A stretch of 64,000 bases of DNA from Scyliorhinus canicula (lineage: Eukaryota). Both the position numbers and the translations under genes were made by a program. A model generated the notes under the pieces. That model saw nothing but the letters and a program-made list of their open reading frames with translations. It was not told the origin of the DNA and made no database searches. The stretch lies in NCBI RefSeq assembly GCF_902713615.1, contig NC_052147.1, positions 125,060,435-125,124,434 of the forward strand, read 5' to 3'. This document shows, one piece after another, positions 1-64,000 of the stretch (position 1 is the first letter of the stretch; each line of letters opens with the position of its first letter).

Positions 1-43
1 ATCTTGGATCGGCACGGGGGACCCTGCAAGCGATTACTCCGTA

Positions 44-2890
44 TTGGATGGCGACTCTGGGTTCCTGCCACGACTCGCCTCGGTGGCGCTGGATCAATCA
101 CGGCCCCGCACGCTTTCCACGGCGACTACACAGATCCAGATCAATGGTCGCAAGACGAGCTGCCTACTGGACTCCGGGAGCACAGAGAGCTTCTTCCACC
201 CCGACACGGTAAGACGCTGCGCGCTCCCCGTTCACCCAGTAAAGCACAAATTCGCTCTGGCATCTGGTTCGCACTCAGACCAAATCACCGGGTGCTGCGT
301 GGCGGACCTCACGGTCCAGAGGAGGGTTTTTAAAAACTATAAATTCCTCATCCTTCCCCGCCTCTGCGCACCGGCACTTCTCGGACTGGACTTTCAGTGC
401 AACCTGCAGAGCTTAACTTTTAAATTCGGCGGCCCTATTCCCCCCTTATTGTCTGCAGCCTCACGTCCCTCAAGGTCGACCCCCCCTTCCCTATTTGCAA
501 ACCTCACCCCGGATTGCAAACCCGTCGCCACCAGGAGCAGACGGTACAGTGCCCAGGACTGGACCTTCATCAGGTCCGAGGTCCAAAGGCTGCTGAAGGA
601 AGAGGTCATAGAGGCCAGCAACAGTCCCTGGTGAGCACAAGTGCTGGTGGTTAAGACTGGGGAGAAAAACCAAACGGTCATCGATTACAGTCAGACCATC
701 AACAGGTTTACGCAGCTGGACGCGCATCCTCTCCCCCGTATCTCCGACCTGGTTAACAGGATCGCGCAGTACAAAGTCTTTTCCACGGTAGACCTTAAGT
801 CCGCCTAATATCAACTCCCCATCCACGCGTGTGACCGAAAATACACTGCTTTCGAAGCGGATGGGCGACTCTACCACTTATTAAGGGTTCCATTTGGCGT
901 CACGAATGGGGTCTCGGTCTTCCAGAGGAAGATGGACCGAATGGTTGATCAATACGATTTACGAGCCACCTTCCCGTATCTCGACAATGTCACCATCTGC
1001 GGCCATGACCAGCAGGACCATGACACCAACCTCCGAAAATTCCTCCGTACCGCAAAACTCCTTAACCTCACGTATAATAAGGATAAATGCGTGTTTAGCA
1101 CCAACCGTCTAGCCATCCTCGGCTACGTAGTACGTAACGGAGTGATAGGCCCCGACCCCGAACGCATGCGCCCCCTAATGGAACTCCCCCTTCCCAACTC
1201 CCTCAAAGCCCTCAAACACTGTCTGGGCTTCTTTTCTTATTATGCCCAGTGGATCCCTAACTACGCCGACAAAGCCCGCCCCCTCATTCAGTCCAACACG
1301 TTCCCCCTGTCGATGGAGGGTCGCCAGGCCTTTGGCCGCGTCAAAACAGACATTGCGAAGGCCACGATGCGTGCTATCGATGAGTCCCTCCCATTCCAGG
1401 TCGAGAGCGACGCATCCGATGTAGCTCTGGCGGCCACCCTCAACCAAGCGGGCAGACCCGTGGCCTTTTTCTCCCGGACCCTCCACGCTTCCGAACTCCG
1501 CCATTCCTCGGTGGAAAAGGAGGCACAGGCCATTGTTGAAGCTGTGCGACATTGGAGGCACTATCTGGCCGGCAGGAGGTTTACCCTCCTCACAGACCAA
1601 CGGTCAGTAGGCTTCATGTTCGATAATGCACAGAGGGGCAAGATCAAGAACGATACGATCTTGAGGTGGTGGATCGAGTTGTCCACGTACAACTACGATA
1701 TCCTGTATCGTCCTGGGAAGCTCAACGAGCCTCCTGATGCCCTGTCCCACGGTACCTGCGCCAACACACAGGTGGACCGCCTCTGCACCCTCCACGCGGA
1801 CCTCTGCTATCCAGGGGTCGCCCATTTTTTTCATTTTATCAAGACCCGCAACGTGTCCTCCTCCATCGAGGAGGTCAGGACTGTAACCAGGGAATGCTAC
1901 ATTTGCGTGGAGTGCAGGACGCACTTCTACCGCCCCGAGCAGGCGCATCTTGCCCTTTTGAACGTCTTAGCATGTACTTCAAGGGTCCCCACCCCTCCAA
2001 CAACTTCAACACATATTTCTTAAATGTGATTGACAAGTACTCCCGCTTCCCATTTGCCATCCCCTGCCCCGACATGACCACATCAACGATCATCAGAGCC
2101 CTCCACTCCATTTCCTCCTTGTTCGGTTACTCCGTGTACATCCACAGCGACCGGGGGTCCTCCTTTATGAGTGACGAGCTGCGTCAATTCCTGCTCAGCA
2201 GGGGCACAGCCTCTAGCAGGACGACCAGTTATATCCCCCGGGGTAACGGTCAGGCCGAGAGGGAGAACGGTACGGTCTGGAAGACCGTCCTACTGGCCCT
2301 GCGGTCCAGGTGTCTCCCAGTCTCCCACTGGCAAGAGGTCCTCCCAGACGCCCTCCACTCTATTCGGTCTCTCCTCTGTACTGCTACAAATCAAACACAT
2401 CATGAACGTCTTCTTGTTTTCCCCAGGATGTCTTCCTCTGGGACCCCACTCCCGACCTGGCTAGCCACCCCCGGGCCCATCCTGCTCCGGAAGCATGTCG
2501 GGTGCACAAGTCCGATCCGTTGGTTGAAAGAGTCCAGTTACTCCACGCGAACCCGCAGTACACGTATGTGGAGTATCCCGACGGACGACAGGTAACGGTC
2601 TCCATTCGGGACCTGGCACCCGCCGGAGTGCGGCCACACCCCCCAGCACCAACACTCCCCCCCCCCAGTCCCGACTGCCCCCAGTGCCCCCAGCACCCCC
2701 GCAACCCCCGCAACCCAACAGGAACCCCTTCCCCCGGCCCGACTACCACTAACTCCGACCAGGGTTACAAACACAGGTCCACGACTGCAGCTCTTGGAGT
2801 CACGGACGACCACCGCTCCAACGTGACCAGCGCCGCTGCGCAGGTCCGGCAGGACACCAAAGGCACCCACCCGGCTGATCGAGTCAATTT
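44..2890 (+). pseudogene. pol: Degenerate gypsy pol (protease, RT, RNase H, integrase)
   Basis: Protease LLDSGS (ORF 44-634); RT SNSPW*, VDLKSA, PFGV, YLDN; RNase H ESDASD/SVEKEA/LTDQ/PDALS (ORF 932-2023); integrase HSDRGSSF and NGQAERENG (ORF 1894-2595). Interrupted by stops (632-634, 807-809) and frameshifts. Confidence 0.93.
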
Positions 2891-3168
2891 TTTGGACCTT
2901 ATGGACTTTCATGTTCTGCATATGTTCCTTGCCTGTGCTTTTTATTATTATTACTATGGTTATTGTTGGGTTTTTTTCTCCTGTGCACTGTATATAGCAT
3001 GGTTTTCTTAGACGTTCATTGCGGGCCAGTGGGCAGCCATAGTTACCTCAGTACTACCTGAGAAGGTCCCTAGTCATACTACCAGTTTTATGGGACATAC
3101 ACCCCCCCCCCCCCGTCTCTCCCTTCACTCCTTCCCATCCCCCCGCTTCTTTCTCAACAAGGGGTGAA

Positions 3169-3471
3169 TGTGGTAGTATGACTAGAGAGATCATATTACC
3201 AAAGAACCAAGCTGCCATTGGTACAGCAGCCTCGCTGCACATTGGCCCAGGCATGTCATGTGCCTCTCTGCCAATTGGTTGTGGCTGGTCATGTGACTCC
3301 CTATCGATTGGCTGAGAGGTTGATAGCTCCGCCTACAAGGCAGGGTATAAGAGCTCGTACCGGCTGGCAGTCGGCCTTTCTCTGTACGACCACTGCTGGG
3401 CTCATATGTAGCGTATTAAAGCCTGTTGTTTGGAACTTCACTACGACTCGAGTCCAATTGATGGTGCATCA
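3169..3471 (+). repeat. 3' LTR of family A copy 1 (303 bp)
   Basis: TG...CA termini; CCAAT/ATTGG boxes; TATAA at ~3345; ATTAAA at 3415-3420. Confidence 0.95.
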
Positions 3472-6353: not shown

Positions 6354-6585
6354 TGATGCACGATCAATTACGACGAGATTAGAGTAGAGTGTAATATTAC
6401 GCAGAGATGTGGAGCCTCCCGCAGCTGCTGCCGAAATGGCTGCAGTTCGGAGAGCACACACATTTATACTCCGCCTACTGGGCGGAGCCAGCAGGCAGGG
6501 ATCTACCCCCGTACCTGTAGTACAGGGGCCTTACCATAATACCCTCGTATGCAGTATACACAATACAACAGTGGTGACTACCACA
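6354..6585 (-). repeat. 3' LTR, family B
   Basis: Matches 10422-10662 apart from small deletions; TG/CA termini. Confidence 0.95.
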
Positions 6586-6669
6586 TTCACCCCCTGTTAA
6601 AAAAAGAGTCCAGCGGGGGTGGTGGAAAACTATTTACATACAGGTTGTTTAAAATTTAAGAAAGAGGTT

Positions 6670-9450
6670 ACAAATTTAGACGATCGGGCGCCTTGATCCG
6701 TCGTTGCGAGCGCCGCAATCGTGGTGACGATTCAGGCGTCGGTTCGTTCATCGGTGACTCCGGGAGCGCGTCAACCTCATCTTCATCCCCGGGTGGGATC
6801 AAGGGGAGGGTGGATCGTCCTGGATCGGGGGCTGCTATGGGGTGCGCTGGGGGGAGGGAGGGTGGTGCCTGGGCAGGGGGGGGGGGGGTGTGTGTGGGGA
6901 ACCAGCTGGCGCCAGGTCTCTGAGGGAGACTGTGTCTTGGCGGCCATCGGGGTACGCTACATAGGCGTACTGCGGGTTTACGTGGAGTAGCTGTACCCTC
7001 TCAACCAACGGGTCCGCCTTGTGTAGCCGCACGTACTTGCGGAGGAGAACAGGTCCTGGAGCTGCCAGCCATGTTGGGCGTGAAACCCTGGGGCAGGCAA
7101 AGAGACGTTCATGGGGAGTTTCATTAGTCGCAGTGCACAGGAGCGACCGAATGGAGTGAAGGGCGTTGGGGAGGTCCTCCTGCCAGCAAGAGGCCGGGTG
7201 ATTTCTGGACCGTAGGGCCAGCAGGAAGGCCTTTCAGACAGTCCCATTCTCCCGCTCCACCTGCCCGTTTCCCTGAGGATTGTAGCTGGTCGTCCTGCTC
7301 GAGGCAATGCCCCTGTTGAGCAGGTACTGGTGCAGCTCATCGCTCATAAATGAGGATCCCCGGTCGCTGTGGACATAGGCGGGGAAACCGAACAGAGTAA
7401 AGATGGTGTTGAGAGCTTTGATGACAGTGGCAGACGTCATGTTAGGGCATGGGATGGCAAAAGGGAATCTTGAATATTCGTCAACCACATTGAGAAAGTA
7501 TGTGTTGCGGTCGGTGGAGGGGAGGGGCCCTTTGAAGTCCACGCTGAGGCGTTCAAAGGGGCGGGATGCCTTTACCAGGCACGCACTGTCTGGCCGGTAG
7601 AAGTGCGGTTTACACTCCGCGCAGACCTGGCAGTCTCTGGTGATAGCCCTGACCTCCTCAATGGAGTAGGGCAGATTGCGGGCCTTCATGAAGTGATAAA
7701 AGTGGGTGACCCCTGGGTGATAAAGATCGTCGTGCAGGGTGCGGAATCGGTCCACTTGTGCATTGGCACATGTACCTCGGGAGAGGGCATCGGGGGGCTA
7801 GTTGAGCTTACCAGGGTGATAAAAAATCTCGTAATTGTAGGTGGAGAGCTCGATCCTCCACCTCAAGATTTTATCATTTTTGATCTTACCCCGCTGTGTG
7901 TCATTAAACATAAAGGCAACCGACCGTTGGTCAGTGAGGAGAGTGAATCTCCTGCCGGTCAGGTAATGCCTCCAATGTCGCACAGCTTCAACGATAGCTT
8001 GGGCCTCGTTTTCAACAGAGGAGTGGCGAATTTTGGAGGCATGGAGGGTGCGGGAAAAGAATGCCACGGGCCTGCCTGCCTGGTTGAGGGTGGTGGCTCG
8101 AGCGACATCTGATGCATCGCTCTCGACTTGGAAGGGGAGTGTCTTGTCGACCGCGTGCATCGCGGCCTTGGCGATGTCGGCCTTGATACGGTTGAAGGCC
8201 TGGTGAGCTTCGGCCATCAGGGGAAAACTGTGGAGTGGATGAGTGGACGGGCCTTGTCTGCACAGTTTGGGACCCACTGGGCGTAGTACGAGAAAAACCC
8301 CAGGCATCGTTTGAGGGCCTTGGGGGCCTTGGGGCAGTGGGAGTTTCATGAGGGAGCGCATGCGATTGGGGTCGGGCCCTTGAACTCCGTTCTGAACCAC
8401 ATAGCCGAGGATGGCTAATCAGTCCGTGCTGAACATGCACGACTCCTTGTTTTAGGTTAGGTTGAGGAGTTTGACGGTGTGGAGGAATTTGAAAGGTTAG
8501 CGTCGTGGTCCTGCTGGTCGTGGCCGCAGGTGGTGACGTTATCCAGGTACGGGAAAGTGGCCCGCAATCCATACCGGTCAGCCATTCAGTCCATGTCCCG
8601 TTTGAAGACTGAGACCCCGTTCGTGACGCCGAAGTGAACCCTAAGGAAGTGGTAAAGGCGGCCGTCCGCCTCAAACGCGGTGTACTGGTGGTCCGCCTTG
8701 CGAATGGGGAGCTGGTGGTAGGCAGATTTCAGGTCCACTGTCGAGAAGACCAGGTAATGGGCAATCTGATTGACCATATCAGATACACGTGAGAGGGGGT
8801 ACGCGTAGAGCTGCGTGTGCCGATTGATGGCCTGACTGTTGTCAACGACCATCCTGTTTTTCTCCCCAGTTTTCACCACAACCACTTGGGCTCACTAGGG
8901 GCTGTTGCTGGCCTCGTTAATACTTTCCCACAGCAGCCGCTGGACCTCAGATCTGATGAAGGTCCTGTCCTGGGCACTGTACCGTCAGCTCCTGGTGGCG
9001 ACGTGTTTGCAATACGGGGTGAGGTTCGCAAACAGGGAAGGTGGGTCGATCTTAAGGGTCGTGAGGCCGCATTCAGTAAGGGGTGGTTGGGGCTCACCAA
9101 ATTTCAGTGTTGGGCTCTGGAGGTTGCACTGGAAGTCTAGGCCGAGTAGCAAGGCAGCGCAAAAGTTGGGGAGGACGTAGAGCTGGAAGCTGCTGAACTC
9201 TACACCCTGGATGGTGAGGGTGGCGGTGCAATTCCCCCGGATCGCCAGGGAGATTCTCTGGTTGATAGGGTGTACCGTGAGGGAGCAGCACCTTACCATA
9301 TCGGGGCGGATGAGCTCTCAGTGCTCCTGGAATCCAGAAGGCAGGATATCTTGTGCTCGTCGACCTTCACTGTCGTCGACGCGGTCGCGATGTTGTGCGG
9401 TCGGGACTGGTCGATCGTGATGGAGGCCAGACATGGCTGATAGGCGGCAA
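6670..9450 (-). pseudogene. pol: Degenerate gypsy pol, family B
   Basis: CLLDS (protease); VDLKSAYHQ and YLDN (RT); ESDASD (RNase H); HxxxxH...CQVC zinc finger and VDFKGP/HSDRG/VERENG (integrase, ORF 7234-7755). Multiple frameshifts. Confidence 0.92.
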
Positions 9451-10395
9451 TAAGCGGCCTGATGAGGTGCCCGATGAGCAGGGGTCCTGAGGTGCGGAAG
9501 ATGGCAGCCTCCACGGGCTCCACGTTTCATGGGGCAGGCATGATGGCGGTGCCCAGGGGTCGCTCGTGTTGTGAGGCGAGTAAGATGGCGAGCAAGATGG
9601 CGGCGCCCACGGGCTCCACGTGGTCTGAGGCGAGCAAGATGGCGCCCACGGGCTCCACGTGTTCTGAGGCGAGGAAGATGGCGGCGTCCGCGGGTCGCAC
9701 ATGGGGGGTGCCAGGGCAATAGTGGCGACCAAGCGGGCTTGGCACACAGCAGCAAAATGTCCTTTCTTCCCGCAGGCCTTGCAGAGAGCACTCTGTGCCG
9801 GGCAGCACTGTCAGGGGTGTTTTGACTGTCCGCAGAAGCAGCACTTGGGTCCCCAGGGTTGGTTGGCTGCCTCGGGGGCATATGCCTGTATATTGCGTTA
9901 GGCGACTGTGAGCTTGGTCGCCGCGAGTTCGAGGGTAGCCGCTTCTAAGAGTCGCTGGCAGATGTAGGCTGACCCTATGCCTGTAACAAACGCGTCTCTA
10001 AGTAGGAGGTCAGAATGTTCAGCGGCCGAAACGGCCTGGCAATCGCAGTCTCTCACCAGGAGTTGCAGGGTACGCCAGAAATCTTCCACAGACTCACCGG
10101 GGAGTTGGTGCCACGTGGAGAGGAGGTGCCTGGCATAGATTTTGTTGGTCTGCTGAGTATAGTTCTCCTTCAGTTGCGCCATGGCCTCAGCGTAGGTTGG
10201 CGCGTCCCGGATGAGGGGAAAGATGTCGGAGCTCAGACCCGTGTAAAGGATCTGGAGCTTCTGTGCCTCTGAGGGTGGTTCTGTCACAGATCCGATGTAT
10301 GTCTTGAAGCAAGCTAGCCAATGTGCGAAGGCCAACTTGGCGTTGTCTGCTTGAGGGTGCAGCTGCAGGCGATCAGGCTTGATGCGGAGGCCCAT
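9450..10395 (-). pseudogene. gag: Degenerate gypsy gag, family B
   Basis: ORF 9898-10395 MGLRIKPDRL...RDAFVTG is homologous to the family A gag at 54479-54799; paired CCHC knuckles CCFCGQSKHP...CKACGKKGHFAAVC at ~9745-9845. Confidence 0.88.
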
Positions 10396-10421
10396 CGTTT
10401 TAAAATCTCTGCGTAATAAAT

Positions 10422-10662
10422 TGATGCACTATCAATTACGACAAGACGAGAGTAGAGTGTAATCGAGGCTTTATTAAGCAGAGATGTGTAGCCTCCCGCA
10501 GCTGCTACCAAAATGGCTGCAGTTCGGAGAGCCCACACATTTATACTCCACCTACTGGGGGGAGCCAGCAGGCAGGGATCTACCCCCGTACCTGTAGTAC
10601 AGGGGCCTTACCGTAATACTCTCTTATGCAGTATACACAATACAACAATGGTGACTACCACA
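10422..10662 (-). repeat. 5' LTR, family B (241 bp)
   Basis: TG/CA termini; minus-strand TATAAA at ~10541-10546 and AATAAA at 10470-10475. Confidence 0.95.
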
Positions 10663-22952: not shown

Positions 22953-23550
22953 GGGCGTGATTCTCCGCAACGGCCGACGCCGGAGTGAAACCCGGAGTGT
23001 TTCACTCCGGCGTCGGAGGCCGCTCCTTGCCCCCTATTCTCCCCCCCCCCAACCCCCGGGGGGCTAGGAGCGGCGTTGCGAGAAACTCTACCGCCGGGCC
23101 TTGACGCTTGCGTGAAAGCGGCGCGCCGAGAATGACACGGCCGGCGGCGCCTAAGTGACGTCAGCCGTGCATGCGCAGGTTGGCCGGCTCCAACCCGCGC
23201 ATGCGTGGTTGCCGTCTTCCCCTCCGCTGCCCCGCAAGACGTGGCGGCTTGATCTTCCGGGGCGGCGGAGGGGAAAGAGTGCGTTTCTTAGAGACACCGC
23301 CCCGACGATCGGTGGGCACCGATTGCGGGCCAGTCCCCTTACGAGCACGCTCGTGGTGCTCGATCCTCTCTCCGCCCCCCACAGGCCCCACACTTACCTG
23401 TCGTGCGATGTTCACGCCGGCAGCGACCAGGTGTGGTTGGCGCCGGCGTGAACCCGTTGGGGTCGTCAGGCCGCTCGGCCCATCCGGGCCGGAGAATCGC
23501 CGGTCGCCATGAAAAACGTTGAGCGCCGATTTGCCGAGCGGCGTGTAGCA
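22953..23550. mobile_element. GC-rich Harbinger-type MITE, truncated, inverted relative to 4809-5489
   Basis: TIR GGGCGTGATTCTCCG; body is the reverse complement of the 4809-5489 element. Confidence 0.8.
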
Positions 23551-27611: not shown

Positions 27612-27818
27612 ATAGCGGCACGGTGGTGCAGTGGTTAGCACTGCTGGTTATGACGCGGAGGACCCGGGTTTGATCCCGGCCTTGGGTCACTGACTGTGTG
27701 GAGTTTGAATGTTCTCCCTGTGTCTACATGGGTCTCACCCCCATAACCCAAAGATGTGCAGTTTCGGTGGATTAGCCACGCAAAATTGCTACTTTTTTGG
27801 AAAAAAATAATTTATTTT
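27612..27818 (+). mobile_element. HE1/V-SINE-like SINE
   Basis: GCGGCACGGTGGTGCAGTGGTTAGC...GTGTGGAGTTTG. Confidence 0.85.
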
Positions 27819-37419: not shown

Positions 37420-37864
37420 GGGCAGCATGGTAACGCAGCGGTTAGCACTGGGACTGCGGCACTGCGGACCCGGGTTCCAATTCCGGCCCTGGGTCACTGT
37501 CCGTGTGGAATTTGCACATTCTCCCCGTGTCTGCTTGGGTTTCACCCCCAAACCCAAAAAGAGGTGCAGGTTAGGTGGATTTGCCACGCTAAATTGCCCC
37601 TTATTTTTATTAATTTTTAATTCTTTTTTCCAATTAAGGGGCAATTTAGCATGGCCAATCCACCCACCCTGCACATCTTTTGGGTTGTGGGGGCCAAACC
37701 CATGCAAACACGGGGAGAATGTGCAAACTCCACACGGACAGTGACCCAGAGCCGGGATCGAACCTGGGACCTCGCCGCTGTGAGGCAGCAGGGTAACCCA
37801 CTGCGCCACCAAATTGACCCTTAATTAGAATAAAAAATAATTGGGTACTCTAAATTTTAAAATA
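37420..37864. mobile_element. SINE (+) with an antisense SINE of the same family inserted in its tail
   Basis: Outer TSD AATAATTCTATGATAAC; inner copy ~37604-37810 flanked by AAATTGCCCCTTA / AAATTGACCCTTA. Confidence 0.88.
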
Positions 37865-39015: not shown

Positions 39016-39526
39016 AATTTGATCCAGATTTTGCTGAAAAAAGATAATGCTGTCTGTTATGTATTTAAGTAAACCATTCCTGATCACAGTAAGAAGTCTT
39101 ACAACACCAGGTCAATATTCCTACTGATGGAACATCACGTGATCTGTAGTGATGTCAGCAGAGTGTTTGCGGGGCTTTCAGTTCTCCATCTTGATATTAT
39201 ATGAGCAACATCTCCTGAACAAACCTGTCTGAATAAAATGTTTGGAAGAAAACCAAGTGCTGGCATCTCCATACTTTTTCTCTTTGGGGCACATTGAGAA
39301 TATAACACTGACTGGTGCGCACTGGTCAGCAACTCGAAAAGGATGAGATAGCCGCTGAATTGCAAACCGCCACAGTTACTGGCCAATTTGCACCATGACA
39401 ATAGCATCTCAGTGCTTAACCACCCTGTGTCATGAAATTGCTACATTTGTCCATCAAATCTTCCACAGATATTCCAAAAACAATAGGGCAAGTACCCTTT
39501 CAATGATGTGATAAACATTATGATGG

Positions 39527-39755
39527 GGGGGCAACACGGTGGCGCAGTGGTGAGCATTGCTGCTTCACGGCGCCGAGGTCCCAGGTTCGATCCCGGCTCT
39601 GTGACACTGTCCGTGTGGAGTTTGCACATTCTCCCCGTGTTTGCGTGGGTTTCACCCCCACAACCCAAAGATGTGCAGGGTACGTGGATTGGCCACATTA
39701 AATTGCCCCTTAATTGGAAAAAATGAATTGGGTTCTTTAAATTTATTTTAGAAAA
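39527..39755 (+). mobile_element. HE1/V-SINE-like SINE
   Basis: tRNA head; TSD TAAA(CA/TG)TTATGATG. Confidence 0.9.
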
Positions 39756-41423: not shown

Positions 41424-42268
41424 TGCGGCACAGTGGCACAGTGGTTAGCACTGCTGTCCCACAGGTCCCGGGTTCGATTCCAGCCTTGGGTGACTGTCTA
41501 TGTGGAGTTTGCACATTCTCCCCGTGTCTGCGTGGGTTTCCTCGAGTGCTCCAGTTTCCTCCCACAGTCAAAAGATGAGGGGCGCGATTCTCCGCTCCCA
41601 CGCCGGGTGGGAGAATCGCGGGAGGGCCGCTCTGGCACCCCCCGCGATTCTCCCACCCCCCCCCCCAAAATGGCATATCGCGTTTTGCGATACGCCGCTC
41701 AGAGAATCGCGTTTTTCATGGCGGCCCACGATTCTCCGACCCGGATGGTCCGAGCGGCCTGCCGTTCACTGCCTACCGATCATCGGGCCGGCGTCTCAAT
41801 GGGACACACTCTTTCCCCTCCGCTGCCCCGCAAGATCAAGCCGCCACGTCTTGCGGGGCAGCGGAGGGGAAGACGGCAGCCGCGCATGGGCGGATTGGAG
41901 CTGGCCAACCCGCGCATGCGCGGCTGAGGTCATTAGGCGTGTTGGCCGCGTCATTCTTGGTGCGCCAAGATTCATGGCACGGCCCTCCTAGCCCCCCGGC
42001 GGGGGGAGAATAGGGGGCCAGGAGCGGCCTCCGACGCCATCGTGAACCTCTCTGGGTTTCACGACGGCGTCGGGCCTGGTGGCGAATTCCGACCGTGCAA
42101 TTTAGGTGGATTGGCCTTGCTAAATTGCCTCTTAGTGTCCAAGATGCACCAGGTGGGGTTACGGGGTTAAAGGGATGGGGAATGGGCCTAGGTGGGGTCT
42201 GCTTTCAGCAGGTAGGTGCAGACGCGATGGGCTGAATACCTTCCTTCTGCACTGTAGGGATTCTATGA
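41424..42268 (+). mobile_element. HE1/V-SINE-like SINE interrupted by a MITE
   Basis: Head at 41424-41579; body resumes at 42095 as GTGCAATTTAGGTGGATTGGCC. Confidence 0.88.
41580..42094. mobile_element. GC-rich Harbinger-type MITE, same family as 4809-5489
   Basis: GGGCGCGATTCTCCG ... GCGAATTCCGACC; TSD GAG/GTG at the SINE GATGTGCA site. Confidence 0.85.
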
Positions 42269-46714: not shown

Positions 46715-46942
46715 AAAAAAAATGTTTTTTTGAGAGTACGCAATTCATCTTTTCCAACTAAGGGGGAATTTAGTGTGGCCAATCCATCTACCCTGCACAT
46801 CTTTGGGTTGCGGGGGCGAAACCCACGCAAACACAGGGAGAATGTACAAACTCCTCACAGACAGTGACCCAGAGCCAGAATCGGACCTGGGACCTCGGCG
46901 CCGTGAGGCAGGAGTGCTAACCATAGCGCCACCATGCTGCCC
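46715..46942 (-). mobile_element. HE1/V-SINE-like SINE
   Basis: Reverse-complement head ending GCGCCACCATGCTGCCC. Confidence 0.88.
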
Positions 46943-50772: not shown

Positions 50773-53700
50773 TGATGCACCATCAATTGTACTTGAGTCG
50801 TAGTGAAGTTCCAAACAACAGGCTTTAATACGCCAGATGTGAGCCCGGCAGTGGTCATACAGAGAAAGGCCGACTGCCAGCCAGTATGAGCACTTATACC
50901 CCACCTTGTAGGCGGAGCTACCAACCTCTCAGCCAATCGGCGGGGAGTCACATGACCAGCTATAACCAATTGGCAGAGAGGCACATGACTTGCCTGGGCC
51001 AATGGGCAGCGAGGCTGCTGTACCAATGGCAGCTTGGTTCTTTCGTAATGTGATCTCTCTAGCCATACTACCACATTCACCCCTTGTTGAGAAAGAAGCG
51101 GGGGGATGGGTGGGTGGGAAGGAGTGGCGGGAGAGACGGGGGGGGGGCTGTAAAACTAGTAGTATGACTAGAGACCTTCTCGGGTAGTACCGAGGTAACT
51201 ATGGCTGCCCACTGGCCTGCGACGAACGTGTAAGAAAACTATACTATATACAGTGTACAAGGGAAAAAACAACAATAACCATCGTAATAATAATGGGAAC
51301 AAAACAAAAAAAAACACAGGCAAGGAACATATGCAGAACGTGAAAGTCCATAAGGTCCATCAAATTGACTCGATCAGCCGGATGGTTGCCTTCGATGTCC
51401 TGCCGGACCTGCGCAGCGGTGCCAGCGACGTTGGAGCGGTGGTTGTCCGAGACTCCGGGAGCTGTGGTCGCGGTCCTGTGTCCGTACCCCTGGTCGGAGC
51501 TGGTGGTAGCCGGGCCGGGGGGAGGGGTTCCTGTGCGCTGGGTTGCGGGGGCGCTGGGGGTGCTGGGGGCACTGGGGGCAGTCGGGACTGAGGGAAGGGT
51601 GTTGGTGCTGGGGGATGTGGCCGCACTCCGGCGGGTGCCAGGTCCCGAATGGAGACCGTGTCCTGCCGACCGTCGGGATACTCCACATACGCGTACTGCG
51701 GGTTAGCGTGGAGTAACTGGACTCTTTCAACCAACGGGTCGGACTTGTGCACCCGCACATGCTTCCGGAGCAGGATGGGCCCGGGGGTAGCCAGCCAGGT
51801 CGGGAGTGGGGTCCCAGAGGAAGACTTCCTGGGGAAAAGAAGAAGACGTTCATGATGTGTTTGATTTGTGGCAGTACAGAGGAGAGACCGAATAGAGTGG
51901 AGGGCGTCTGGGAGAACCTCCTGCCAGTGGGAGACTGGGAGACACCTGGACCGTAGGGCCAGTAGGACGGTCTTCCAGACTGTACCATTCTCCCTCTCGA
52001 CCTGACCGTTACCCCGGGAGTTATAACTGGTCGTCCTGCTAGAGGCGATGTCCCTGCTGAGCAGGAATTGACGCAGTTCGTCACTCATAAAGGAGGACCC
52101 CCGGTCGCTGTGGATGTACACGGGGTAACCGAACAGGTTGCCTCCTTTTCCACTGAGGAATGGCGGATTTCGGAACCATGGAGGGTCCGGGAGAAAAAGG
52201 ACACGGGTCTGCCCGCTTGGCTGAGGGTGGCCGCCAGAGCTACATCGGACACGTCGCTCTCAACCTGGAATGGGAGGGACTCATCGATAGCGCGCATCGT
52301 GGCCTTTGCAATGTAATTTTTGATGCGGCTAAAGGCCTGGCGGGCCTCCATCGACAGTGGAAACGTGTTGGACTGGATGAGGGGGCGGGCTTTGTCGGCG
52401 TAGTTAGGGACCCACTGGGAATAATAAGAAAAAAAGCCCAGACAGCGTTTGAAGGAGTTGGGAAGGGGGAGTTCTATTAGGGGGCGCATGCGTTCGAGGT
52501 CAGGGCCTATCACTCCATTACGCACTACGTAGGCGAGGATGGCTAGACGGTGCTTATCCTTATTATACGTGAGGTTAAGGAGCTTTGCGGTTCGGAGGAA
52601 TTTACGGAGGTTGGTGTCGTGGTCCTGCTGGTCATGGCCGCAGATGGTGACATTGTCGAGATACGGGAAGGTGGTGATGCACCATCGATTGCACGCGAGG
52701 CGAGTGATTTACCAATGTCAGGCTTTAATTAACTAGAACACAGCCTGGCGATCGTCTACAGTGGAAAGGAACGATCGTCAGGCTTCTGAGCATTTATACC
52801 TCGTTGATAGAGGCGTGGTTAACTCAGCCTCTCGGCCAATCGGTCGAGAGGCACATGACCGACCAGGGCCAATGGTAAGCCGACGTTCTGGCCCAATGGC
52901 AGACGAGTATGCAGATCATATCATCACAGGTGGCTCGTAAATCGTATTGGTCAATCATCCGGTCCATCTTCCTCTGGAAGACCGAGACCCCATTCATGAC
53001 ACCAAAAGGAACCCTTAAAAAGTGGTAGAGTCGCCCATCCGCTTCGAACGCAGTGTACTTTCGGTCACTCGTGCGGATGGGGAGCTGGTGGTAGGCGGAC
53101 TTAAGGTCCACCGTGGAAAAAACTTTGTACTGCGCGATCCTGTTAACCAGGTCGGAGATACGGGGGAGAGGATATGTGTCCAGTTACGTAAACCTGTTGA
53201 TGGTCTGACTGTAATCGATGACCATACGGTTTGTCTCTCCAGTCTTAACCACCAGCACTTGTGCTCTCCAGGGACTGTTGCTAGCCGCAATGACCCCTTC
53301 CTTCAGGAGCCTTTGGACCTCGGACCTGATGAAGGTCCAGTCCTGGGCACTGTACCGTCTGCTCCTGGTGGCGACGGGTTTGCAATCCGGGGTGAGGTTT
53401 GCAAACAAGGAAGGGGGGTTGACCTTGAGGGACGCGAGGCTGCAGACAGTAAGGGGGGGAATAGGGCCACCGAATTTAAAAGTTAAGCTCTGCAGGTTGC
53501 ACTGAAAGTCCAGTCCAAGAAGTGCCGGTGCGCAGAGGCGGGGAATGATGAGGAATTTATAATTTTTAAAAACCCTCCCCTGGACCGTGTGATTTGGACG
53601 GAGTGTGAACCAGATGCCAGAGCTATTTTGTGCTTTACGGGGTGAACGGGGAGCGCGCAGCGTCTTACCGTGTCGGGGTGGACAAAACGCTCTGTGCTTC

Positions 53701-55119
53701 CGGAGTCCAGCAGGCAGCTCATCTCGCGACCGTTGAGGTGGATCTGTGTGGTCGCCGTGGAAAGCGTGTGGGGCCGTGATTGATCCAGCGTCACCGAGGC
53801 GAGTCGTGGCAGGAACTCGGAGTCATCATCCAATACGGAGTAATCGCTTGCGGGGTCCTCCGTGCCGATCCAAGATGGCGGCGCCCATCGGCCGTACGTG
53901 GTGGGGGATGAACAAGATGGCGGCACCCTGGGGTCACACGTGGAGTCGGCCGTGGATCACTCGTGGTGGTGGGGGGTGGAGTCAGCGAGGAGTGCAGGGA
54001 GGGGTGCCGCGGTCGCTGTCTGGAACGGCAGCGACTGACTTGGAGAGGCAGACGGCCGCGAAATGGCCCTTTTTGCCGCAGCTCTTGCAGACTGCGGTGC
54101 GGGCGGGGCAGCGTGGGCGGGGGTGCTTGGCCTGCCCGCAGAAATAGCAGCGGGGGCCCGTGGGCTTGTCTGGGCGTCCTGCAGCCCAGGTCTGGGTGTC
54201 TCAGTCGGCGGGTGCGAGTGGGGTGTCCCATGCTGCCACGGGGCTGCCGTGCGGCCAGGAGTATACGCGCCCGCATTGGGGTCAGCGACCTCCAAGGAGG
54301 ATGCAAGGGTCCGTGCCTCAGTGAGGCTGAGAGTGTCCTTTTCTAACAGTCTCTGGCGTATTTGGGGTGACTGCATGCCCGCTACAAAGGCGTCCCTGAT
54401 CAAGAGTTCGGTGTGCTCCGCAGCAGTGACCTGCGGGCAGGCGCAATTTCTCCCCAGGACAATGAGGTCCTGATAGAATTAATCGAGGGACTCACCGGGG
54501 AATTGTTGCCTTGTTGCCAGGAGGTGCCGCACGTAGGCCTGGTTTACTGGCCTGATGAAGTGTCCTTTTAGAAGATCCATAGCGACATCATAGTCCAGTT
54601 CGTCCTCTATCATCGAGTAAACGGCGGTGCCCACGCACGAGTGGAGGATGTGGAGTTTCTGCTCCTTTGTTGGTCGATTTTCTGCAGTAGTGAGGTAGCT
54701 GTTGAAGCACGCCAGCCAATGTTTAAAAGTTGCTGACGCGTTTGCAGCATGCGGGCTGATCCGGAGGCATTCTGGCTTAATCCGTAGTTCTATTTTCAAA
54801 GTCTAGCGTATTAAATTGATGCACCATCAATTGGACTCGAGTTGTAGTGAAGTTCCAAACAACAGGCTTTAATACGCTAGATGTGAGCCCGGCAGTGGTC
54901 ATACAGAGAAAGGCCGACTGCCAGCCGGTACGAGCTCTTATATCCTGCCTTGTAGGCGGATCTACCAACCTCTCAGCCAATCGGCAGGGAGTCACATGCC
55001 CAGCCACAACCAATTGGCAGAGAGGCACATGACTTGCCTGGGCCAATGGGCAGCGAGGTTGCTGTACCAATGGCAGCTTGGTTCTTTGGTAATATGTTCT
55101 CTCTGGCCATACTACCACA
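50773..55119 (-). mobile_element. Ty3/gypsy LTR retrotransposon, family A copy 2 (internal deletion, nested solo LTR)
   Basis: 303-bp LTRs at 50773-51075 and 54817-55119; TSD CATTC; PPT complement at 51076; gag (ELRIKPECL..., paired CCHC at ~54050-54150), PR LLDSGS, RT, partial RH and partial IN. Confidence 0.97.
52675..52928 (-). repeat. Solo LTR (254 bp) nested in RT of family A copy 2
   Basis: Sense TGTGATG...GGTGCATCA; TSD GGTGG; TATAAA and ATTAAAGCC present. Confidence 0.93.
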
Positions 55120-59917: not shown

Positions 59918-60792
59918 TCAACTGCACTTGACTGATTGGGTGCATAACTCCAAATGTGCTAAAGAGAGCTTCCTTAACCACATCCCAAGTTTCTCCCTGT
60001 GTTTGTTGCATGAAAATTGCTCAGAAAAGTCACTCAGTGCAACATGATGGAATGAAGTCCGTTTCACTGCTGTCATGAATAGGGTGTGATCCCCACAGCC
60101 GGGATAGGGTGTAATGAAATTGTACAGAGGCAGTTCCGCAAACAATCAGCACTGATCTCTCCTGCACATATTGCAGGATTGAGCACATTGCCGATGCGAC
60201 AAATCACAACGCTCATCTGATCGACATATTTTTGACCCTGATGTCATGACATTAAGGGTCAATTACTGTGTGATCCTTGAATGAATTAGCTGATTTTGCA
60301 GAGCCAAGTGAGCGGCCTGAATTAGAAAATTAAGTGCAGAGGCTAGTGCAATTGATTTATAATCAGCTTCTACCCAGGGACAAAAGGACTGTTGATCCCT
60401 GCTGCCACCGTCTGACAGGCAAGGAGCACTGCCCTGCAGTGTCAAGCAGAGACTGTCTTCCAACCCATCATTTATTACAGGCAGCCTGAGTCACTGAAAA
60501 TACATTCAGTGCAGCGTTACTCTGACACACATTCCCCATTTCATGTTGGTCTTTTTACCTTGCCATCACTTACATTCCATTCCCACCCACAACTGTGGAA
60601 AAGGTTGATAAATATCATGTAAACATTTTCAACATTCACAAAGTCTGAAATCTTATTTTATTCCACAAGCAGCAACTTTACTTTAATACATGCAACCATT
60701 TGATATCGGAGTCACATGTTGCCTCTGCCCCATTAAATTGAAGATAATGCTAATTATTCAAAAGGTCTGGCTCTGTAAAATTGTACAACGTC

Positions 60793-63700
60793 GGGCAGGC
60801 TGTGAGCAGTCTAACCAGGCAGGATGTGGGCTAGCTGACCGGGCAGGATGTGGGCTACCTGGGTGGGCAGGATGTGGGCTAGCTGGCTGGGCAGGATGTG
60901 GGCTAGCTGGCTGGGCAGGATGTGGGCTAGCTGGCTGGGTAGGATGTGGGCTAGCTGGCCAGGCAGGATGTGGGCCAGCTGACCGGGCAGGATGTGGGCT
61001 AGCTAACCGGGCAGGATGTGGGCTAGCTGGCACGGCAGGATGTGGGCTAGCTGGCTGGGCAGGATGTGGGCTAGCTGACCGGGCAGGATGTGGGCTAGCT
61101 GGCCGGGCAGGATGTGGGCTAGCTGGCCCGGGCAGGATGTGGGCTAGCTGGCCGGGCAGGATGTGGGCTAGCTGGCCGGGCAGGATGTGAGCTAGCTGGC
61201 CAGGCAGGATGTGGGCTAGCTGGCCGGGCAGGATGTGGGCTAGCTGGCTGGGCAGGATGTGGGCTAGCTGGCCCGGGCAGGATGTGGGCTAGCTGGCCGT
61301 GCAGGATGCGGGCTAGCTGGCCGGGCAGGATGTGGGCTAGCTGACCGGGCAGGATGTGGGCTAGCTGGCCGGGCAGGATGTGGGCTAGCTGGCCGGGCAG
61401 GATGTGGGCTAGCTGGCCGTGCAGGATGTGGGCTAGCTGACCAGGCAGGATGTGGGCTAGCTGGCCGGGCAGGATGTGGGCTAGCTGGCTGGGCAGGATG
61501 TGGACTAGGTAACCGGGCAGGATGTGGGCTAGCTGGCCGGGCAGGATGTGTGCTAGCTGACCGGGCAGGATGTGGGCTAGCTGGCCGGGCAGGATGTGGG
61601 CTAGCTGGCCGGGCAGGATGTGGGCTAGCTGACCGGGCAGGATGTGGGCTAGCTGGCCGGGCAGGATGTGGGCTAGCTGGCCGTGCAGGATGTGGGCTAG
61701 CTGGCCGGGCAGGATGTGGGCTAGCTGGCCGGGCAGGATGTGGGCTAGCTGGCCGGGCAGGATGTGGGCTAGCTGGCCGGGCAGGATGTGGGCTAGCTGG
61801 CCGGGCAGGATGTGGGCTAGCTGGCCGGGCAGGATGTGGGCTAGCTGGCCGGACAGGATGTGGGCTAGCTGACCAGGCAGGATGTGGGCTAGCTGGCTGG
61901 GCAGGATGTGGGCTAGCTGACCGTGCAGGATGTGGGCTAGCTGGCCGGGCAGGATGTGGGCTAGCTGACCAGGCAGGATGTGGGCTAGCTGGCTGGGCAG
62001 GATGTGGGCTAGCTGGCCGGGCAGGATGTGGGCTAGCTGACAGGGCAGGATGTGGGCTAGCTGGCGGGCCCGGGCAGGATGTGGGCTAGCTGGCCGGGCA
62101 GGATGTGGGCTAGCTGGACGGGCAGGATGTGGGCTAGCTGACCGGGCAGGATGTGGGCTAGCTGGCCGGGCAGGATGTGGGCTAGCTGGCCGGGCAGGAT
62201 GTGGGCTAGCTGGCCCGGGCAGGATGTGGGCTAGCTGGCCGGGCAGGATGTGGGCTAGCTGACCGGGCAGGATGTGGGCTAGCTGGCCGTGCAGGATGTG
62301 GGCTAGCTGGCCGGGCAGGAAGTGGGCTAGCTGGCTGGGCAGGATGTGGGCTAGCTGGCCGGGCAGGATGCAGGCTAGCTGGCCGCGCAGGATGTGGGCT
62401 AGCTGGCGGGCCCGGGCAGGATGTGGGCTAGCTGGCCGGGTAGGATGTGGGCTAGCTGGCCGGGCAGGATGTGGGCTAGCTGGACGGGTAGGATGTGGGC
62501 TAGCTGACCGGGCAGGATGTGGGCTAGCTAACCGGGCAGGATGTGGGCTAGCTGGCTGGGCAGGATGTGGGCTAGCTGACCGGGCAGGATGTGGGCTAGC
62601 TGGCCGGGCAGGATGTGGGCTAGCTGGCCCGGGCAGGATGTGGGCTAGCTGGCAGGGCAGGACGTGGGCTAGCTGACCGGGCAGGATGTGGGCTAGCTGG
62701 CCGGGCAGGATGTGGGCTAGCTGGCCGGGCAGGATGTGGGCTAGCTGACAGGCCAGGATGTGGGCTAGCTGGCTGGCCCGGGCAGGATGTGGGCTAGCTG
62801 GCCGGCCAGGATGTGGGCTAGCTGGACAGGCAGGATGTGGGCTAGCTGATCGGGCAGGATGTGGGCTAGCTGGCCGGGCAGGATGTGGGCTAGCTGGCCG
62901 GGCAGGATGTGGGCTAGCTGGCCCGGGCAGGATGTGGGCTAGCTGGCCGGGCAGGATGTGGGCTAGCTGACCGGGCAGGATGTGGGCTAGCTGGCCGTGC
63001 AGGATGTGGGCTAGCTGGCCGGGCAGGATGTGGGCTAGCTGGCCCGGGCAGGATGTGAGCTAGCTGGCCGGGCAGGATGTGGGCTAGCTGGATGGGCAGG
63101 ATGTGGGCTAGCTGGCCGGGCAGGATGTGGGCTAGCTGGCCGGGCAGGATGTGGGCTAGCTGGCTGGGCAGTATGTGGGCTAGCTGGCTGGGCAGGATGT
63201 GAGCTAGCTGGCCGGGCAGGATGTGGGCTAGCTGACCATGTAGGATGTGGGCTAGCTGGCCGGGTAGGATGTGGGCTAGCTGGCGGGGCAGGATGTGGGC
63301 TAGCTGGCCGGGCAGGATGTGGGCTAGCTGGCCGGGCAGGATGTGGGCTAGCTGGCTGGGCAGGATGTGGGCTAGCTGGCCTGGCAGGATGTGGGCTAGC
63401 TAACCGGGCAGGATATGGGCTAGCTGACCGGGCAGGATGTGGGCTAGCTGGCCGGGCAGGATGTGAGCTAGCTGGCCGGGCAGGATGTGGGCTAGCTGGC
63501 TGGGCAGGATGTGGGCTAGCTGGCCGGGCAGGATGTGGGCTAGCTGACCGTGCAGGCTGTGGGCTAGCTGGCAGGGCAGGATGTGGGCTAGCTGGCCGGA
63601 CAGGATGTGGGCAGGCTGACCGGGCAGGATGTGGGCTAGCTGACTGGGCAGGAAGTGGGCTAGCTGGCCGGGCAGGATGTGCGCTAGCTGGCCGGGCAGG

Positions 63701-64000
63701 ATGTGGGCTAGCTGGCCGGGCAGGAGGTGGGCTAGCTGGCCGGGCAGGATGTGGGCTAGCTGGACGGGCAGGATGTGGGATAGCTGGCCGGGCAGGATGT
63801 GGGCTAGCTGGCCCGGACAGGATGTGGGCTAGCTGACCGGGCAGGATGTGGGCTAGCTGACCGGGCAGGAGGTGGGCTAGCTGGCCGGGCAGGATGTGGG
63901 CTAGCTGACCGGGCAGGATGTGGGCTAGCTAACCGGGCAGGATGTGGGCTAGCTGGCGGGGCAGGATGTCGGCTAGCTGGCCGGGCAGGGTGTGGGCTAG
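60793..64000 (+). repeat. 24-bp minisatellite (GGGCAGGATGTGGGCTAGCTGGCC)n, ~130 copies, continues past the window
   Basis: Directly visible tandem array; variants mostly in the TGGCC/TGACC/TGGCT segment. Confidence 0.99.

What the first reader, a model, noticed from the sequence alone, without database searches (positions are those of the whole stretch)
977..988. Reverse transcriptase active site is YLDN, not YxDD, in all three elements
Seen: copy A1 TAT CTC GAC AAT (977-988), copy A2 the same (52652-52663, minus), family B TAC CTG GAT AAC (8538-8549, minus). All four codons differ synonymously between families while Asn is kept, so this is not decay of a single copy. Known: the second Asp of YxDD is nearly invariant in RTs; from memory, the engineered Ty1 D-to-N mutant at this position still polymerises but fails to transpose. 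Inference: this lineage transposed with a two-Asp active site, implying compensating changes, possibly linked to the unusual priming.
Basis: partly seen in the sequence, partly recalled or inferred. Interest (0 to 1): 0.8.

Follow-up and report, generated by a model that had tools for sequence, protein, structure and literature searches.

The report
Natural YxDN reverse transcriptase in Gypsy clade
Three decayed Gypsy-type retrotransposons in this cartilaginous-fish window carry YLDN instead of the textbook YxDD in their reverse transcriptase; this is the usual, selected state of a whole animal-wide clade that has switched between Asp and Asn many times, not damage and not tied to the clade's odd priming.

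Summary
All three Ty3/gypsy copies in the window read Y-L-D-N at the stated codons, and the Asn lies exactly on Ty3 D214, the second Asp of YLDD.

It is not decay.
- Families A and B differ synonymously in all four codons.
- Their pol genes diverged under strong purifying selection (dN/dS 0.13; 0.09 in the RT core).
- YxDN is the majority state of an animal-wide clade (sharks, rays, cnidarians, ctenophores, molluscs, flukes, arthropods).
- 72 of 117 uninterrupted Gag-Pol proteins of about 1200 aa carry N.
- One of these proteins recurs identically on 8 marine contigs whose LTR ends match 100%.

More distant Gypsy RTs are all YxDD. Inside the clade D and N changed 13-14 times, and a single origin is rejected (AU p 5e-75). 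Almost no other residue appears at this position.

The proposed link to priming fails. The self-complementary primer site is present in all 5 N-type and all 4 assessable D-type elements I checked. I found no obligatory compensating residue.

There is precedent: YVDN in nematode BEL/Pao elements, and Ty1 D211N and Ty3 D214N still polymerise in vitro.

The scan's first readers noted YLDN in at least 6 other pieces of this genome. Verdict: real, functional and moderately interesting.

The parts
977..988 (+). RT motif C of copy A1: TAT CTC GAC AAT = YLDN
1..3471 (+). Element A1. It is a Ty3/gypsy copy cut by the window start, with PR, RT, RNase H and a decayed IN. It has in-frame stops near 632 and 806 and is frameshifted after about 2020.
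809..2020 (+). Longest stop-free piece of A1 pol (404 aa: RT palm/thumb, RNase H, start of IN). It was used as the search query.
3169..3471 (+). 3' LTR of A1 (TGTGG...TGCATCA)
50773..55119 (-). Element A2, about 90% identical to A1. Its LTRs are 50773-51075 and 54817-55119 (93-94% alike). It has internal rearrangements.
52652..52663 (-). RT motif C of copy A2: YLDN, same codons as A1
52674..52928 (-). LTR-like fragment inserted in A2 just upstream of the motif. It ends in TGCATCA and is about 69% like the A LTR.
6354..10662 (-). Element B, about 76% identical to A. Its LTRs are 6354-6585 and 10422-10662 (94% alike). It has in-frame stops.
8538..8549 (-). RT motif C of copy B: TAC CTG GAT AAC = YLDN
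54802..54816 (-). Primer-site position of A2. It is the exact complement of LTR segment 54868-54881, which holds the ATTAAA hexamer (self-complementary primer site).
10406..10421 (-). Primer-site position of B. It is complementary, with one mismatch, to the LTR segment that holds AATAAA.

Best explanation
The three elements are old, dead copies of a Ty3/gypsy lineage. The lineage looks Mag-like: one gag-pol frame, two CCHC knuckles, short LTRs, about 4-5 kb. In this lineage the reverse transcriptase normally has Y-x-D-N in motif C. The Asn takes the place of the third carboxylate (Ty3 D214, Ty1 D211, HIV-1 D186). In Ty3 the essential metal ligands are the motif A Asp (D151) and the first motif C Asp (D213), and both are kept here, so catalysis runs on two carboxylates. 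The Asn carboxamide presumably keeps the auxiliary role of the third residue, which is positioning the primer end, a metal or pyrophosphate. That would explain why only D or N is tolerated at this site. The whole clade is a permissive background in which D and N have been exchanged many times by a single G/A transition, and both states persist in intact, multi-copy elements. Shown here: the homology of the position, the clade-wide distribution, purifying selection, intact N-type ORFs, and repeated switching. Inferred: that N-type enzymes support full retrotransposition unaided, and how the Asn acts chemically.
For: The position is homologous: YLDN aligns on Ty3 YLDD at E 7e-31.

Selection is strong. 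A1 versus B gives dN/dS 0.13 over 537 codons (dS about 1.06) and 0.09 in the RT core. All four motif codons are synonymous variants.

Distribution: 86 of 114 close homologues are [YF]xDN and 24 are YxDD. In an exhaustive HMMER search, N occurs only among proteins at least 39% identical to the window RT, and all more distant Gypsy RTs are DD.

Intact elements: 72 of 117 uninterrupted Gag-Pol proteins of 1100 aa or more have N. Several N-type 90%-identity clusters hold 26-106 members. P0129 (1246 aa, YIDN) is identical on 8 contigs of about 4.9 kb from different marine samples, and on the two of these that were scanned the assembled LTR ends match 100%.

Switching: parsimony gives 14 changes on a 140-row tree, at least 8 of them forced by well-supported branches, and 13 on a 191-row tree. 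A single N clade is rejected (delta lnL 506, AU p 5e-75).

The column holds almost only D or N. Both AAT and AAC are used, after GAT or GAC.

Biochemistry: Ty3 D214N and D214E keep polymerase activity, whereas D151N and D213N abolish it (PMC5371799). Ty1 D211N polymerises with kpol down 223-fold and prefers Mn2+ (PMC2148107).

Genome level: the motif region has the deepest pooled coverage in two DNA runs of the organism (about 450,000-770,000 and 270,000-440,000 summed word depth). No alternative letter at 977-988 appears among the 40 listed differences. RNA-seq reads of family members cover the region.
Against: No N-type enzyme of this clade has been assayed.

In both yeast systems the engineered D-to-N enzyme cannot support transposition, so a compensating context is required and I did not identify it.

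Metagenome and Logan contigs with matching ends can be collapsed assemblies of many copies, so 100% LTR identity is not proof of one young insertion.

The read-laying table hid 189 lesser differences, so a minority of G at position 986 is not excluded.

The Mag-lineage assignment rests on architecture, not on a tree with reference elements.
Confidence: 0.8

Rival explanations
1. Decay artefact. The ancestor had YLDD and the Asn arose by G-to-A mutation (for example CpG deamination at GAC|GAT) in dead genomic copies.
For: All three window copies are dead. In family A the codons GAC AAT are what CpG deamination of GAC GAT would give.
Against: Family B has GAT AAC, which does not derive from a CpG. 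The families diverged under purifying selection with N kept. N is present in 72 intact full-length polyproteins from many phyla. All six elasmobranch homologues have N.
Confidence: 0.03
2. N-type elements have a crippled polymerase and spread only by borrowing RT from YxDD partners in the same genome (non-autonomous parasites).
For: Ty1 D211N and Ty3 D214N cannot transpose in vivo. D-type relatives exist in the clade.
Against: The RT core of N-type lineages is under the strongest constraint (dN/dS 0.09), which is not expected for an unused domain. Only D or N is tolerated at the site. No D-type copy is in the window or among the elasmobranch hits. No alternative letter at the motif appears among the listed variants at very deep pooled coverage. 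The closest N/D pairs are only about 73% identical, so they are different families.
Confidence: 0.07
3. The Asn is an adaptation to, or is mechanistically coupled with, the self-priming (tRNA-independent) start of reverse transcription.
For: Every N-type element examined has the self-complementary primer site: window A2 and B, and L002/L003, L006 and L008. N-type RTs were found only inside the clade that has this layout.
Against: All four assessable D-type elements have the same layout. These are L010 (YLDD, 12 nt), L011 (YMDD, basal, 12 nt), L013 (YLDD, 18 nt) and L012 (YLDD, pairing with the 3' LTR copy). D and N switch repeatedly with no change of layout. Nematode BEL/Pao YVDN elements are an independent case.
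Confidence: 0.07
4. The genomic Asn codon is recoded to Asp in the RNA by A-to-I editing (AAU read as GAU), so the protein is YLDD after all.
For: None directly. It is a single A-to-G change at the first codon position.
Against: RNA-seq reads cover the motif at depth about 16 and 84-107 in two runs, and no A>G at 986 is among the listed differences, whereas other A>G sites shared with DNA are listed. There is no obvious double-stranded structure at the site. Editing would have to be near complete in many phyla.
Confidence: 0.02

Closest known systems
Ty3 reverse transcriptase (Saccharomyces cerevisiae; PDB 4OL8, 7Q5B) and its engineered D214N/D214E mutants
   Same: It is the closest solved homologue (E 7e-31), with the same PR-RT-RNase H-IN order. 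The window's N aligns with D214. The engineered D214N keeps RNA- and DNA-dependent polymerase activity, while D151 and D213 are the essential metal ligands (PMC5371799).
   Different: In Ty3 the D214N change abolishes transposition and lowers processivity. Here N is the natural majority state of intact, multi-copy elements. Ty3 uses a tRNA primer, whereas this clade has a self-complementary primer site.
Ty1 RT D211N (Uzun and Gabriel 2001; Pandey et al., PMC2148107)
   Same: It is the same position in YxDD. The mutant polymerises in vitro, which shows that the third carboxylate is not strictly needed for chemistry.
   Different: Ty1 belongs to a different superfamily (Ty1/copia). The change was engineered, kpol falls 223-fold, the enzyme prefers Mn2+, and transposition is lost apart from 5-10% rescue by RNase H suppressors.
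Nematode BEL/Pao elements with YVDN (Cer7-Cer12, Tas, Atlas virus)
   Same: They show the same natural Asp-to-Asn replacement at the same motif position in LTR retroelements. One of them is an intact element with identical LTRs (10.1101/2021.11.23.469668; PMC554778).
   Different: They belong to a different superfamily. The window elements match Ty3/gypsy-type RT_RNaseH and Ty3-type protease models and the Ty3 RT structure, so the change arose independently. In this clade D and N alternate repeatedly rather than marking one fixed lineage.
Mag lineage of Ty3/gypsy (Mag, SURL, Jule; A, B and C clades)
   Same: They share a single gag-pol reading frame of about 1200 aa, two CCHC knuckles, short LTRs, a 4-5 kb size and a very wide metazoan distribution including vertebrates (description of the lineage in PMC6238403).
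   Different: Membership was not tested against reference sequences. I found no paper that mentions YxDN or self-priming for Mag elements.
Tf1/sushi-type self-priming retrotransposons
   Same: The primer-site position is complementary to the element's own upstream RNA instead of a tRNA.
   Different: Here the complementary segment lies at the poly(A)-signal hexamer inside the LTR, 38-60 nt upstream. The RT clade is different. This trait is not linked to D versus N.
GDN motif C of the L polymerases of non-segmented negative-strand RNA viruses (from general knowledge, not tested here)
   Same: This is another right-hand polymerase family in which the last Asp of motif C is naturally Asn.
   Different: These are RNA-dependent RNA polymerases with no close homology to the window RT. 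The Asn is fixed there rather than toggling.

Membership tests
Ty3/gypsy (Metaviridae) LTR retrotransposon | Direct long terminal repeats ending TG...CA | tested here: met
   A2 LTRs are 93-94% alike and B LTRs 94% alike. They read TGTGG...TGCATCA.
Ty3/gypsy (Metaviridae) LTR retrotransposon | Pol domain order PR-RT-RNase H-IN, with Ty3-type RT/RNase H | tested here: met
   Pfam finds gag-asp_proteas/Peptidase_A2B, RVT_1 and RT_RNaseH. The integrase aligns with the P0129 integrase downstream. Ty3 RT is the best PDB match.
Ty3/gypsy (Metaviridae) LTR retrotransposon | Canonical YxDD in RT motif C | tested here: not met
   All three copies read YLDN. This is the finding. It is a variant state within the family, not a reason to exclude membership, because close relatives carry YxDD.
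Mag lineage (A/B/C clades) | Single gag-pol open reading frame, CCHC Gag knuckles, compact size | tested here: met
   Intact relatives have one ORF of 1140-1284 aa, two CCHC motifs and contigs of 4-5 kb. The window's Gag regions align with them at 31-32%.
Mag lineage (A/B/C clades) | Groups with reference Mag, SURL or Jule RT in a phylogeny | not tested
   No reference sequence of these elements was available through the tools.
CsRn1 clade | CHCC-type Gag motif instead of CCHC (defining motif recalled from memory, not checked in a paper here) | tested here: not met
   Relatives carry classical CX2CX4HX4C knuckles.
BEL/Pao YVDN elements (Cer7-12, Tas, Atlas) | BEL/Pao-type pol (Pao protease and RT) | tested here: not met
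   Pfam and PDB matches are Ty3/gypsy type. The named homologues are Gypsy-type.
BEL/Pao YVDN elements (Cer7-12, Tas, Atlas) | Asn in place of the second Asp of YxDD | tested here: met
   literature
Self-priming (Tf1-like) retrotransposons | Primer-site position complementary to the element's own 5' RNA, with no tRNA match needed | tested here: met
   A2 has 14 nt of exact complementarity and B has 15 nt with one mismatch. Relatives have 12-18 nt arms placed 38-43 nt apart, just upstream of gag.
Self-priming (Tf1-like) retrotransposons | Demonstrated RNase H-made self-primer | not testable with these tools
   This needs cDNA intermediates or biochemistry.

The most novel reading that the evidence does not exclude
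This clade offers a natural series of 13 or more independent Asp/Asn swaps at the third catalytic carboxylate of a retroelement RT. The clade's RT may have evolved an active site that truly needs only two carboxylates. In that case the D/N state could act as a tunable setting, for example of metal preference, speed, processivity or pyrophosphorolysis, that families switch between under host pressure. The permissive determinants would be transferable and would explain why Ty1 and Ty3 D-to-N mutants fail in vivo.
Probability: 0.2. Interest if true: 0.7.

Novelty: new member of a known kind. Interest (0 to 1): 0.45.

Why it matters
The second Asp of YxDD is taught as part of an invariant catalytic triad. 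In yeast Ty1 and Ty3, changing it to Asn kills transposition although polymerisation survives. The Sinbad paper of 2005 noted that whether Asn can functionally replace this Asp in natural elements was still open.

This clade shows that a Ty3-related RT has lived with Asn for a very long time, in many animal phyla. It has also moved back and forth between Asp and Asn at least a dozen times. That gives enzymologists matched natural pairs for asking what the third carboxylate really does, and which sequence context makes it dispensable.

For genome annotation there is a practical point. A YxDN motif in these elements must not be read as a sign of an inactive RT.

Tried and rejected
- **Literature.** Searches for YLDN, YVDN, YIDN and YXDD-to-N together with retrotransposon terms found only the BEL/Pao precedent and nothing for Gypsy or Mag. 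The Ty3 primary paper (PMC546138) is not held, so I used the review PMC5371799.
- **Intact relatives in named genomes.** The Hypanus sabinus locus could not be fetched because the file is too large. The Xenia locus has no LTRs. L009 lacks its 5' leader, so its primer site could not be assessed.
- **Compensating residues.** I made a column-by-column screen over 191 RT-RNase H sequences. The best naive association is an RNase H position (P0129 residue 753): N in 91 of 107 N-type sequences against 13 of 82 D-type. With only 7 well-supported independent contrasts the sign test is far from significant, and window copy A1 has Ala there. I rejected it as evidence.
- **CpG deamination as the sole cause.** Rejected on codon usage.
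- **Genome-wide A/G count at position 986.** Read laying lists only the 40 best-supported of 229 differences. None falls in 977-988, but the exact minor-allele share cannot be read.
- **Structure modelling.** Not run. The tool returns no coordinates, so distances around the Asn could not have been measured, and the Ty3 alignment already fixes the position.
- **Clade naming.** Naming by LTR end motifs (Table 3 of PMC3601003) is ambiguous between Mag C and CsRn1.
Full report
**1. Observation**

- 977-988 (+): TAT CTC GAC AAT.
- 52652-52663 (-): the same four codons.
- 8538-8549 (-): TAC CTG GAT AAC.

Each encodes YLDN within ...TFPYLDNVT(I/T)CGHD.... A tblastn of the A1 RT and of a full-length relative finds only these three copies in the window.

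The surrounding reading frame gives an aspartic protease, RT, RNase H and integrase in Ty3/gypsy order. phmmer against all PDB chains gives Ty3 RT as best match (4OL8 and 7Q5B, E 7e-31). It aligns YLDN column for column on Ty3 YLDD, so the Asn replaces the second Asp, Ty3 D214.

**2. The elements**

- A1 runs from the window start to 3471. Its 3' LTR is 3169-3471.
- A2 (50773-55119, minus strand) has LTRs 93-94% alike.
- B (6354-10662, minus strand) has LTRs 94% alike.
- A1 and A2 are about 90% identical. A and B are about 76% identical.

All three are dead. A1 has in-frame stops and a frameshifted integrase. A2 has an LTR-like fragment inserted just upstream of the motif and a deletion of about 595 bp. 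B has stops. The window copies alone therefore cannot show that YLDN worked.

**3. Not decay**

A codon comparison of A1 with B over 537 aligned codons gives dN/dS 0.13 at dS about 1.06. In the RT core the ratio is 0.09. The four motif codons are all synonymous variants. The two families therefore diverged while their RT, with Asn, was under strong purifying selection.

A word-indexed search of 5.8 billion proteins with the 404-aa stop-free A1 piece found 709 hits at E 1e-10 or better. The nearest are from elasmobranchs: Scyliorhinus torazame 81%, Mobula, and Hypanus sabinus 66-74%. After these come cnidarians, a rotifer relative, molluscs, flukes, spiders and a nematode. Of 114 hits that cover the motif, 86 read [YF]xDN and 24 read YxDD. 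All six elasmobranch proteins read YLDN.

An exhaustive HMMER search of 1.84 billion representatives shows the boundary. N occurs only among proteins at least 39% identical to the window RT. Every more distant Gypsy RT in the top 150 is YxDD.

**4. Intact N-type elements exist**

A search with a full-length relative (P0129) returned 120 proteins. Of these, 117 are uninterrupted Gag-Pol polyproteins of 1100 aa or more, from a ctenophore, an isopod, insects, a fluke and many marine samples. 72 carry N and 45 carry D.

Several N-type 90%-identity clusters hold 26 to 106 member sequences. P0129 itself (1246 aa, YIDN) is encoded identically on 8 contigs of about 4.9 kb from different marine samples, and on the two of these that were scanned the LTR ends match 100% as far as assembled. 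L006 (YVDN) has 127-nt LTR ends that are 100% identical. Such contigs can be collapsed assemblies, so this shows multi-copy conservation rather than one dated insertion.

**5. History of the site**

I built an IQ-TREE tree of 140 RT-RNase H sequences with the trait column removed. The outgroup and the basal lineages are all DD. Nearly all N-type rows sit in one nested group of 108 rows (76 N, 27 D). Parsimony needs 14 changes, and well-supported branches force at least 8. A 191-row FastTree gives 13 changes. An AU test rejects a tree that holds all N-type rows together (delta lnL 506, p 5e-75).

The closest N/D pairs are about 73% identical, so the switches separate families rather than copies. 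Apart from a handful of evidently damaged sequences, the column holds only D or N. Asn is encoded by both AAT and AAC, after GAT or GAC. The site is therefore constrained to a carboxylate or its amide. It is not free to vary, and CpG deamination alone does not drive it.

**6. This genome**

Pooling Logan contigs of two DNA runs of the organism at 85% likeness gives very deep summed coverage in the bins that hold the motif. Bin 976-999 is second only to the neighbouring bin 1000-1023: about 450,000 and 770,000 in X1, and about 270,000 and 440,000 in X2. No alternative letter at 977-988 is among the 40 listed differences. A further 189 lesser differences are hidden, so a minority of G is not excluded.

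Oligo-dT RNA-seq reads 85-99% alike, most of them under 95%, cover the motif mainly on one strand. Relatives of these copies are therefore transcribed. No read is 99% alike, so the transcripts do not come from this locus.

First-stage notes record YLDN in at least six other pieces of the same genome. These notes are unchecked.

**7. The proposed link to priming**

The self-complementary primer site is real. In A2 the 14 nt right after the 5' LTR are the exact complement of an LTR segment about 50 nt upstream that holds ATTAAA. In B, 15 nt pair with one mismatch to the segment that holds AATAAA.

The same layout appears just upstream of gag in three N-type relatives: L002/L003 (17 nt), L006 (15 nt) and L008 (13 nt).

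It is equally present in every D-type element that could be assessed:
- L010 (YLDD, 12 nt).
- L011 (YMDD, a basal all-DD lineage, 12 nt).
- L013 (YLDD, 18 nt exact).
- L012 (YLDD, pairing with the 3' LTR copy).

The count is therefore 5 of 5 N-type and 4 of 4 D-type, and the traits do not co-segregate. The priming layout is older and wider than the Asn. Other agents of this scan have followed up the priming layout itself.

**8. Compensating changes**

A screen of all alignment columns found naive associations. The strongest is an RNase H position, which recalls the Ty1 RNase H suppressors. With only 7 well-supported independent contrasts none is significant, and window copy A1 does not carry the associated residue. 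Repeated switching argues for a clade-wide permissive background rather than one compensated event. That background was not identified.

**9. What is known**

- Ty1 D211N polymerises in vitro with kpol down 223-fold and a preference for Mn2+. It cannot transpose, apart from 5-10% rescue by RNase H suppressors (PMC2148107).
- In Ty3, the nearest solved relative, D214N and D214E keep polymerase activity with lower processivity. D151N and D213N are dead. All of these changes block transposition. The authors assign metal binding to D151 and D213 and an auxiliary role to D214 (PMC5371799).
- Natural YVDN is a recognised hallmark of nematode BEL/Pao elements (Cer7-12, Tas, Atlas), including an intact element with identical LTRs. 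The Sinbad paper states that whether Asn can replace Asp with retained activity remained to be determined.
- I found no paper that mentions YxDN for a Ty3/gypsy clade. The library is incomplete, and curated alignments may show it.

**10. Classification**

Intact relatives have a single gag-pol frame, two classical CCHC knuckles, short LTRs and a size of 4-5 kb. This fits the Mag lineage as described in PMC6238403 and excludes the CHCC-type CsRn1 clade. No reference Mag, SURL or Jule sequence was available, so the assignment is an inference.

**11. Verdict**

The suggested tie to priming is not supported, and no specific compensation was found. The phenomenon has precedent in another superfamily and is biochemically plausible from Ty1 and Ty3 mutants.

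I rate it a new member of a known kind. The added value is that the Asn is the majority state of an animal-wide Ty3-related clade and has been exchanged with Asp a dozen or more times.

Noticed in passing
window 60670-64000: A long tandem array of a 24-nt unit with well over 100 copies, 60-95% alike. The region is very G+C-rich (0.58-0.68) with strong positive GC skew (up to 0.41). It runs to the window end.
   Followed up: no
window 52674-52928 (-) inside element A2: An LTR-like fragment that ends in TGCATCA and is about 69% like the family A LTR. It sits inside the RT gene immediately upstream of the YLDN codons. A2 also lacks about 595 bp that A1 has (A1 1525-2120).
   Followed up: partly
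window 54802-54816 with 54868-54881 (A2); 10406-10421 (B); loci L002, L003, L006, L008, L010, L011, L012, L013: The primer-site position is complementary to the element's own LTR segment at the poly(A)-type hexamer (12-18 nt arms). It occurs in N-type and D-type relatives alike. Other agents of the scan have followed it up.
   Followed up: partly
window 1229-1270: In two oligo-dT RNA-seq runs, 82 and 107 reads match only this roughly 40-nt stretch. They continue upstream into one unrelated consensus sequence, with 99% agreement among the reads, and many reads begin at 1270. A fragment of a related element seems to be embedded in an abundant transcript.
   Followed up: no
window 39529-39741 / 46730-46942, 23156-23318 / 41770-41932, 27654-27812 / 46742-46900, 37679-37831 / 39517-39669: Several inverted pairs of 150-210 nt repeats, 77-88% alike. 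They are probably copies of dispersed short repeats and are unrelated to the Gypsy elements.
   Followed up: no
locus L012 1-1143: The intact D-type relative P0377 lies next to a gene with a DDE_Tnp_1_7 (PiggyBac-type) transposase domain on an 892-kb contig.
   Followed up: no
protein P0080 and P0118: Two animal-type Gypsy polyproteins of this clade are labelled in public records as coming from bacterial metagenome bins (Lactococcus garvieae, Candidatus Thiodiazotropha). This is most likely host or eukaryote contamination of the bins.
   Followed up: no
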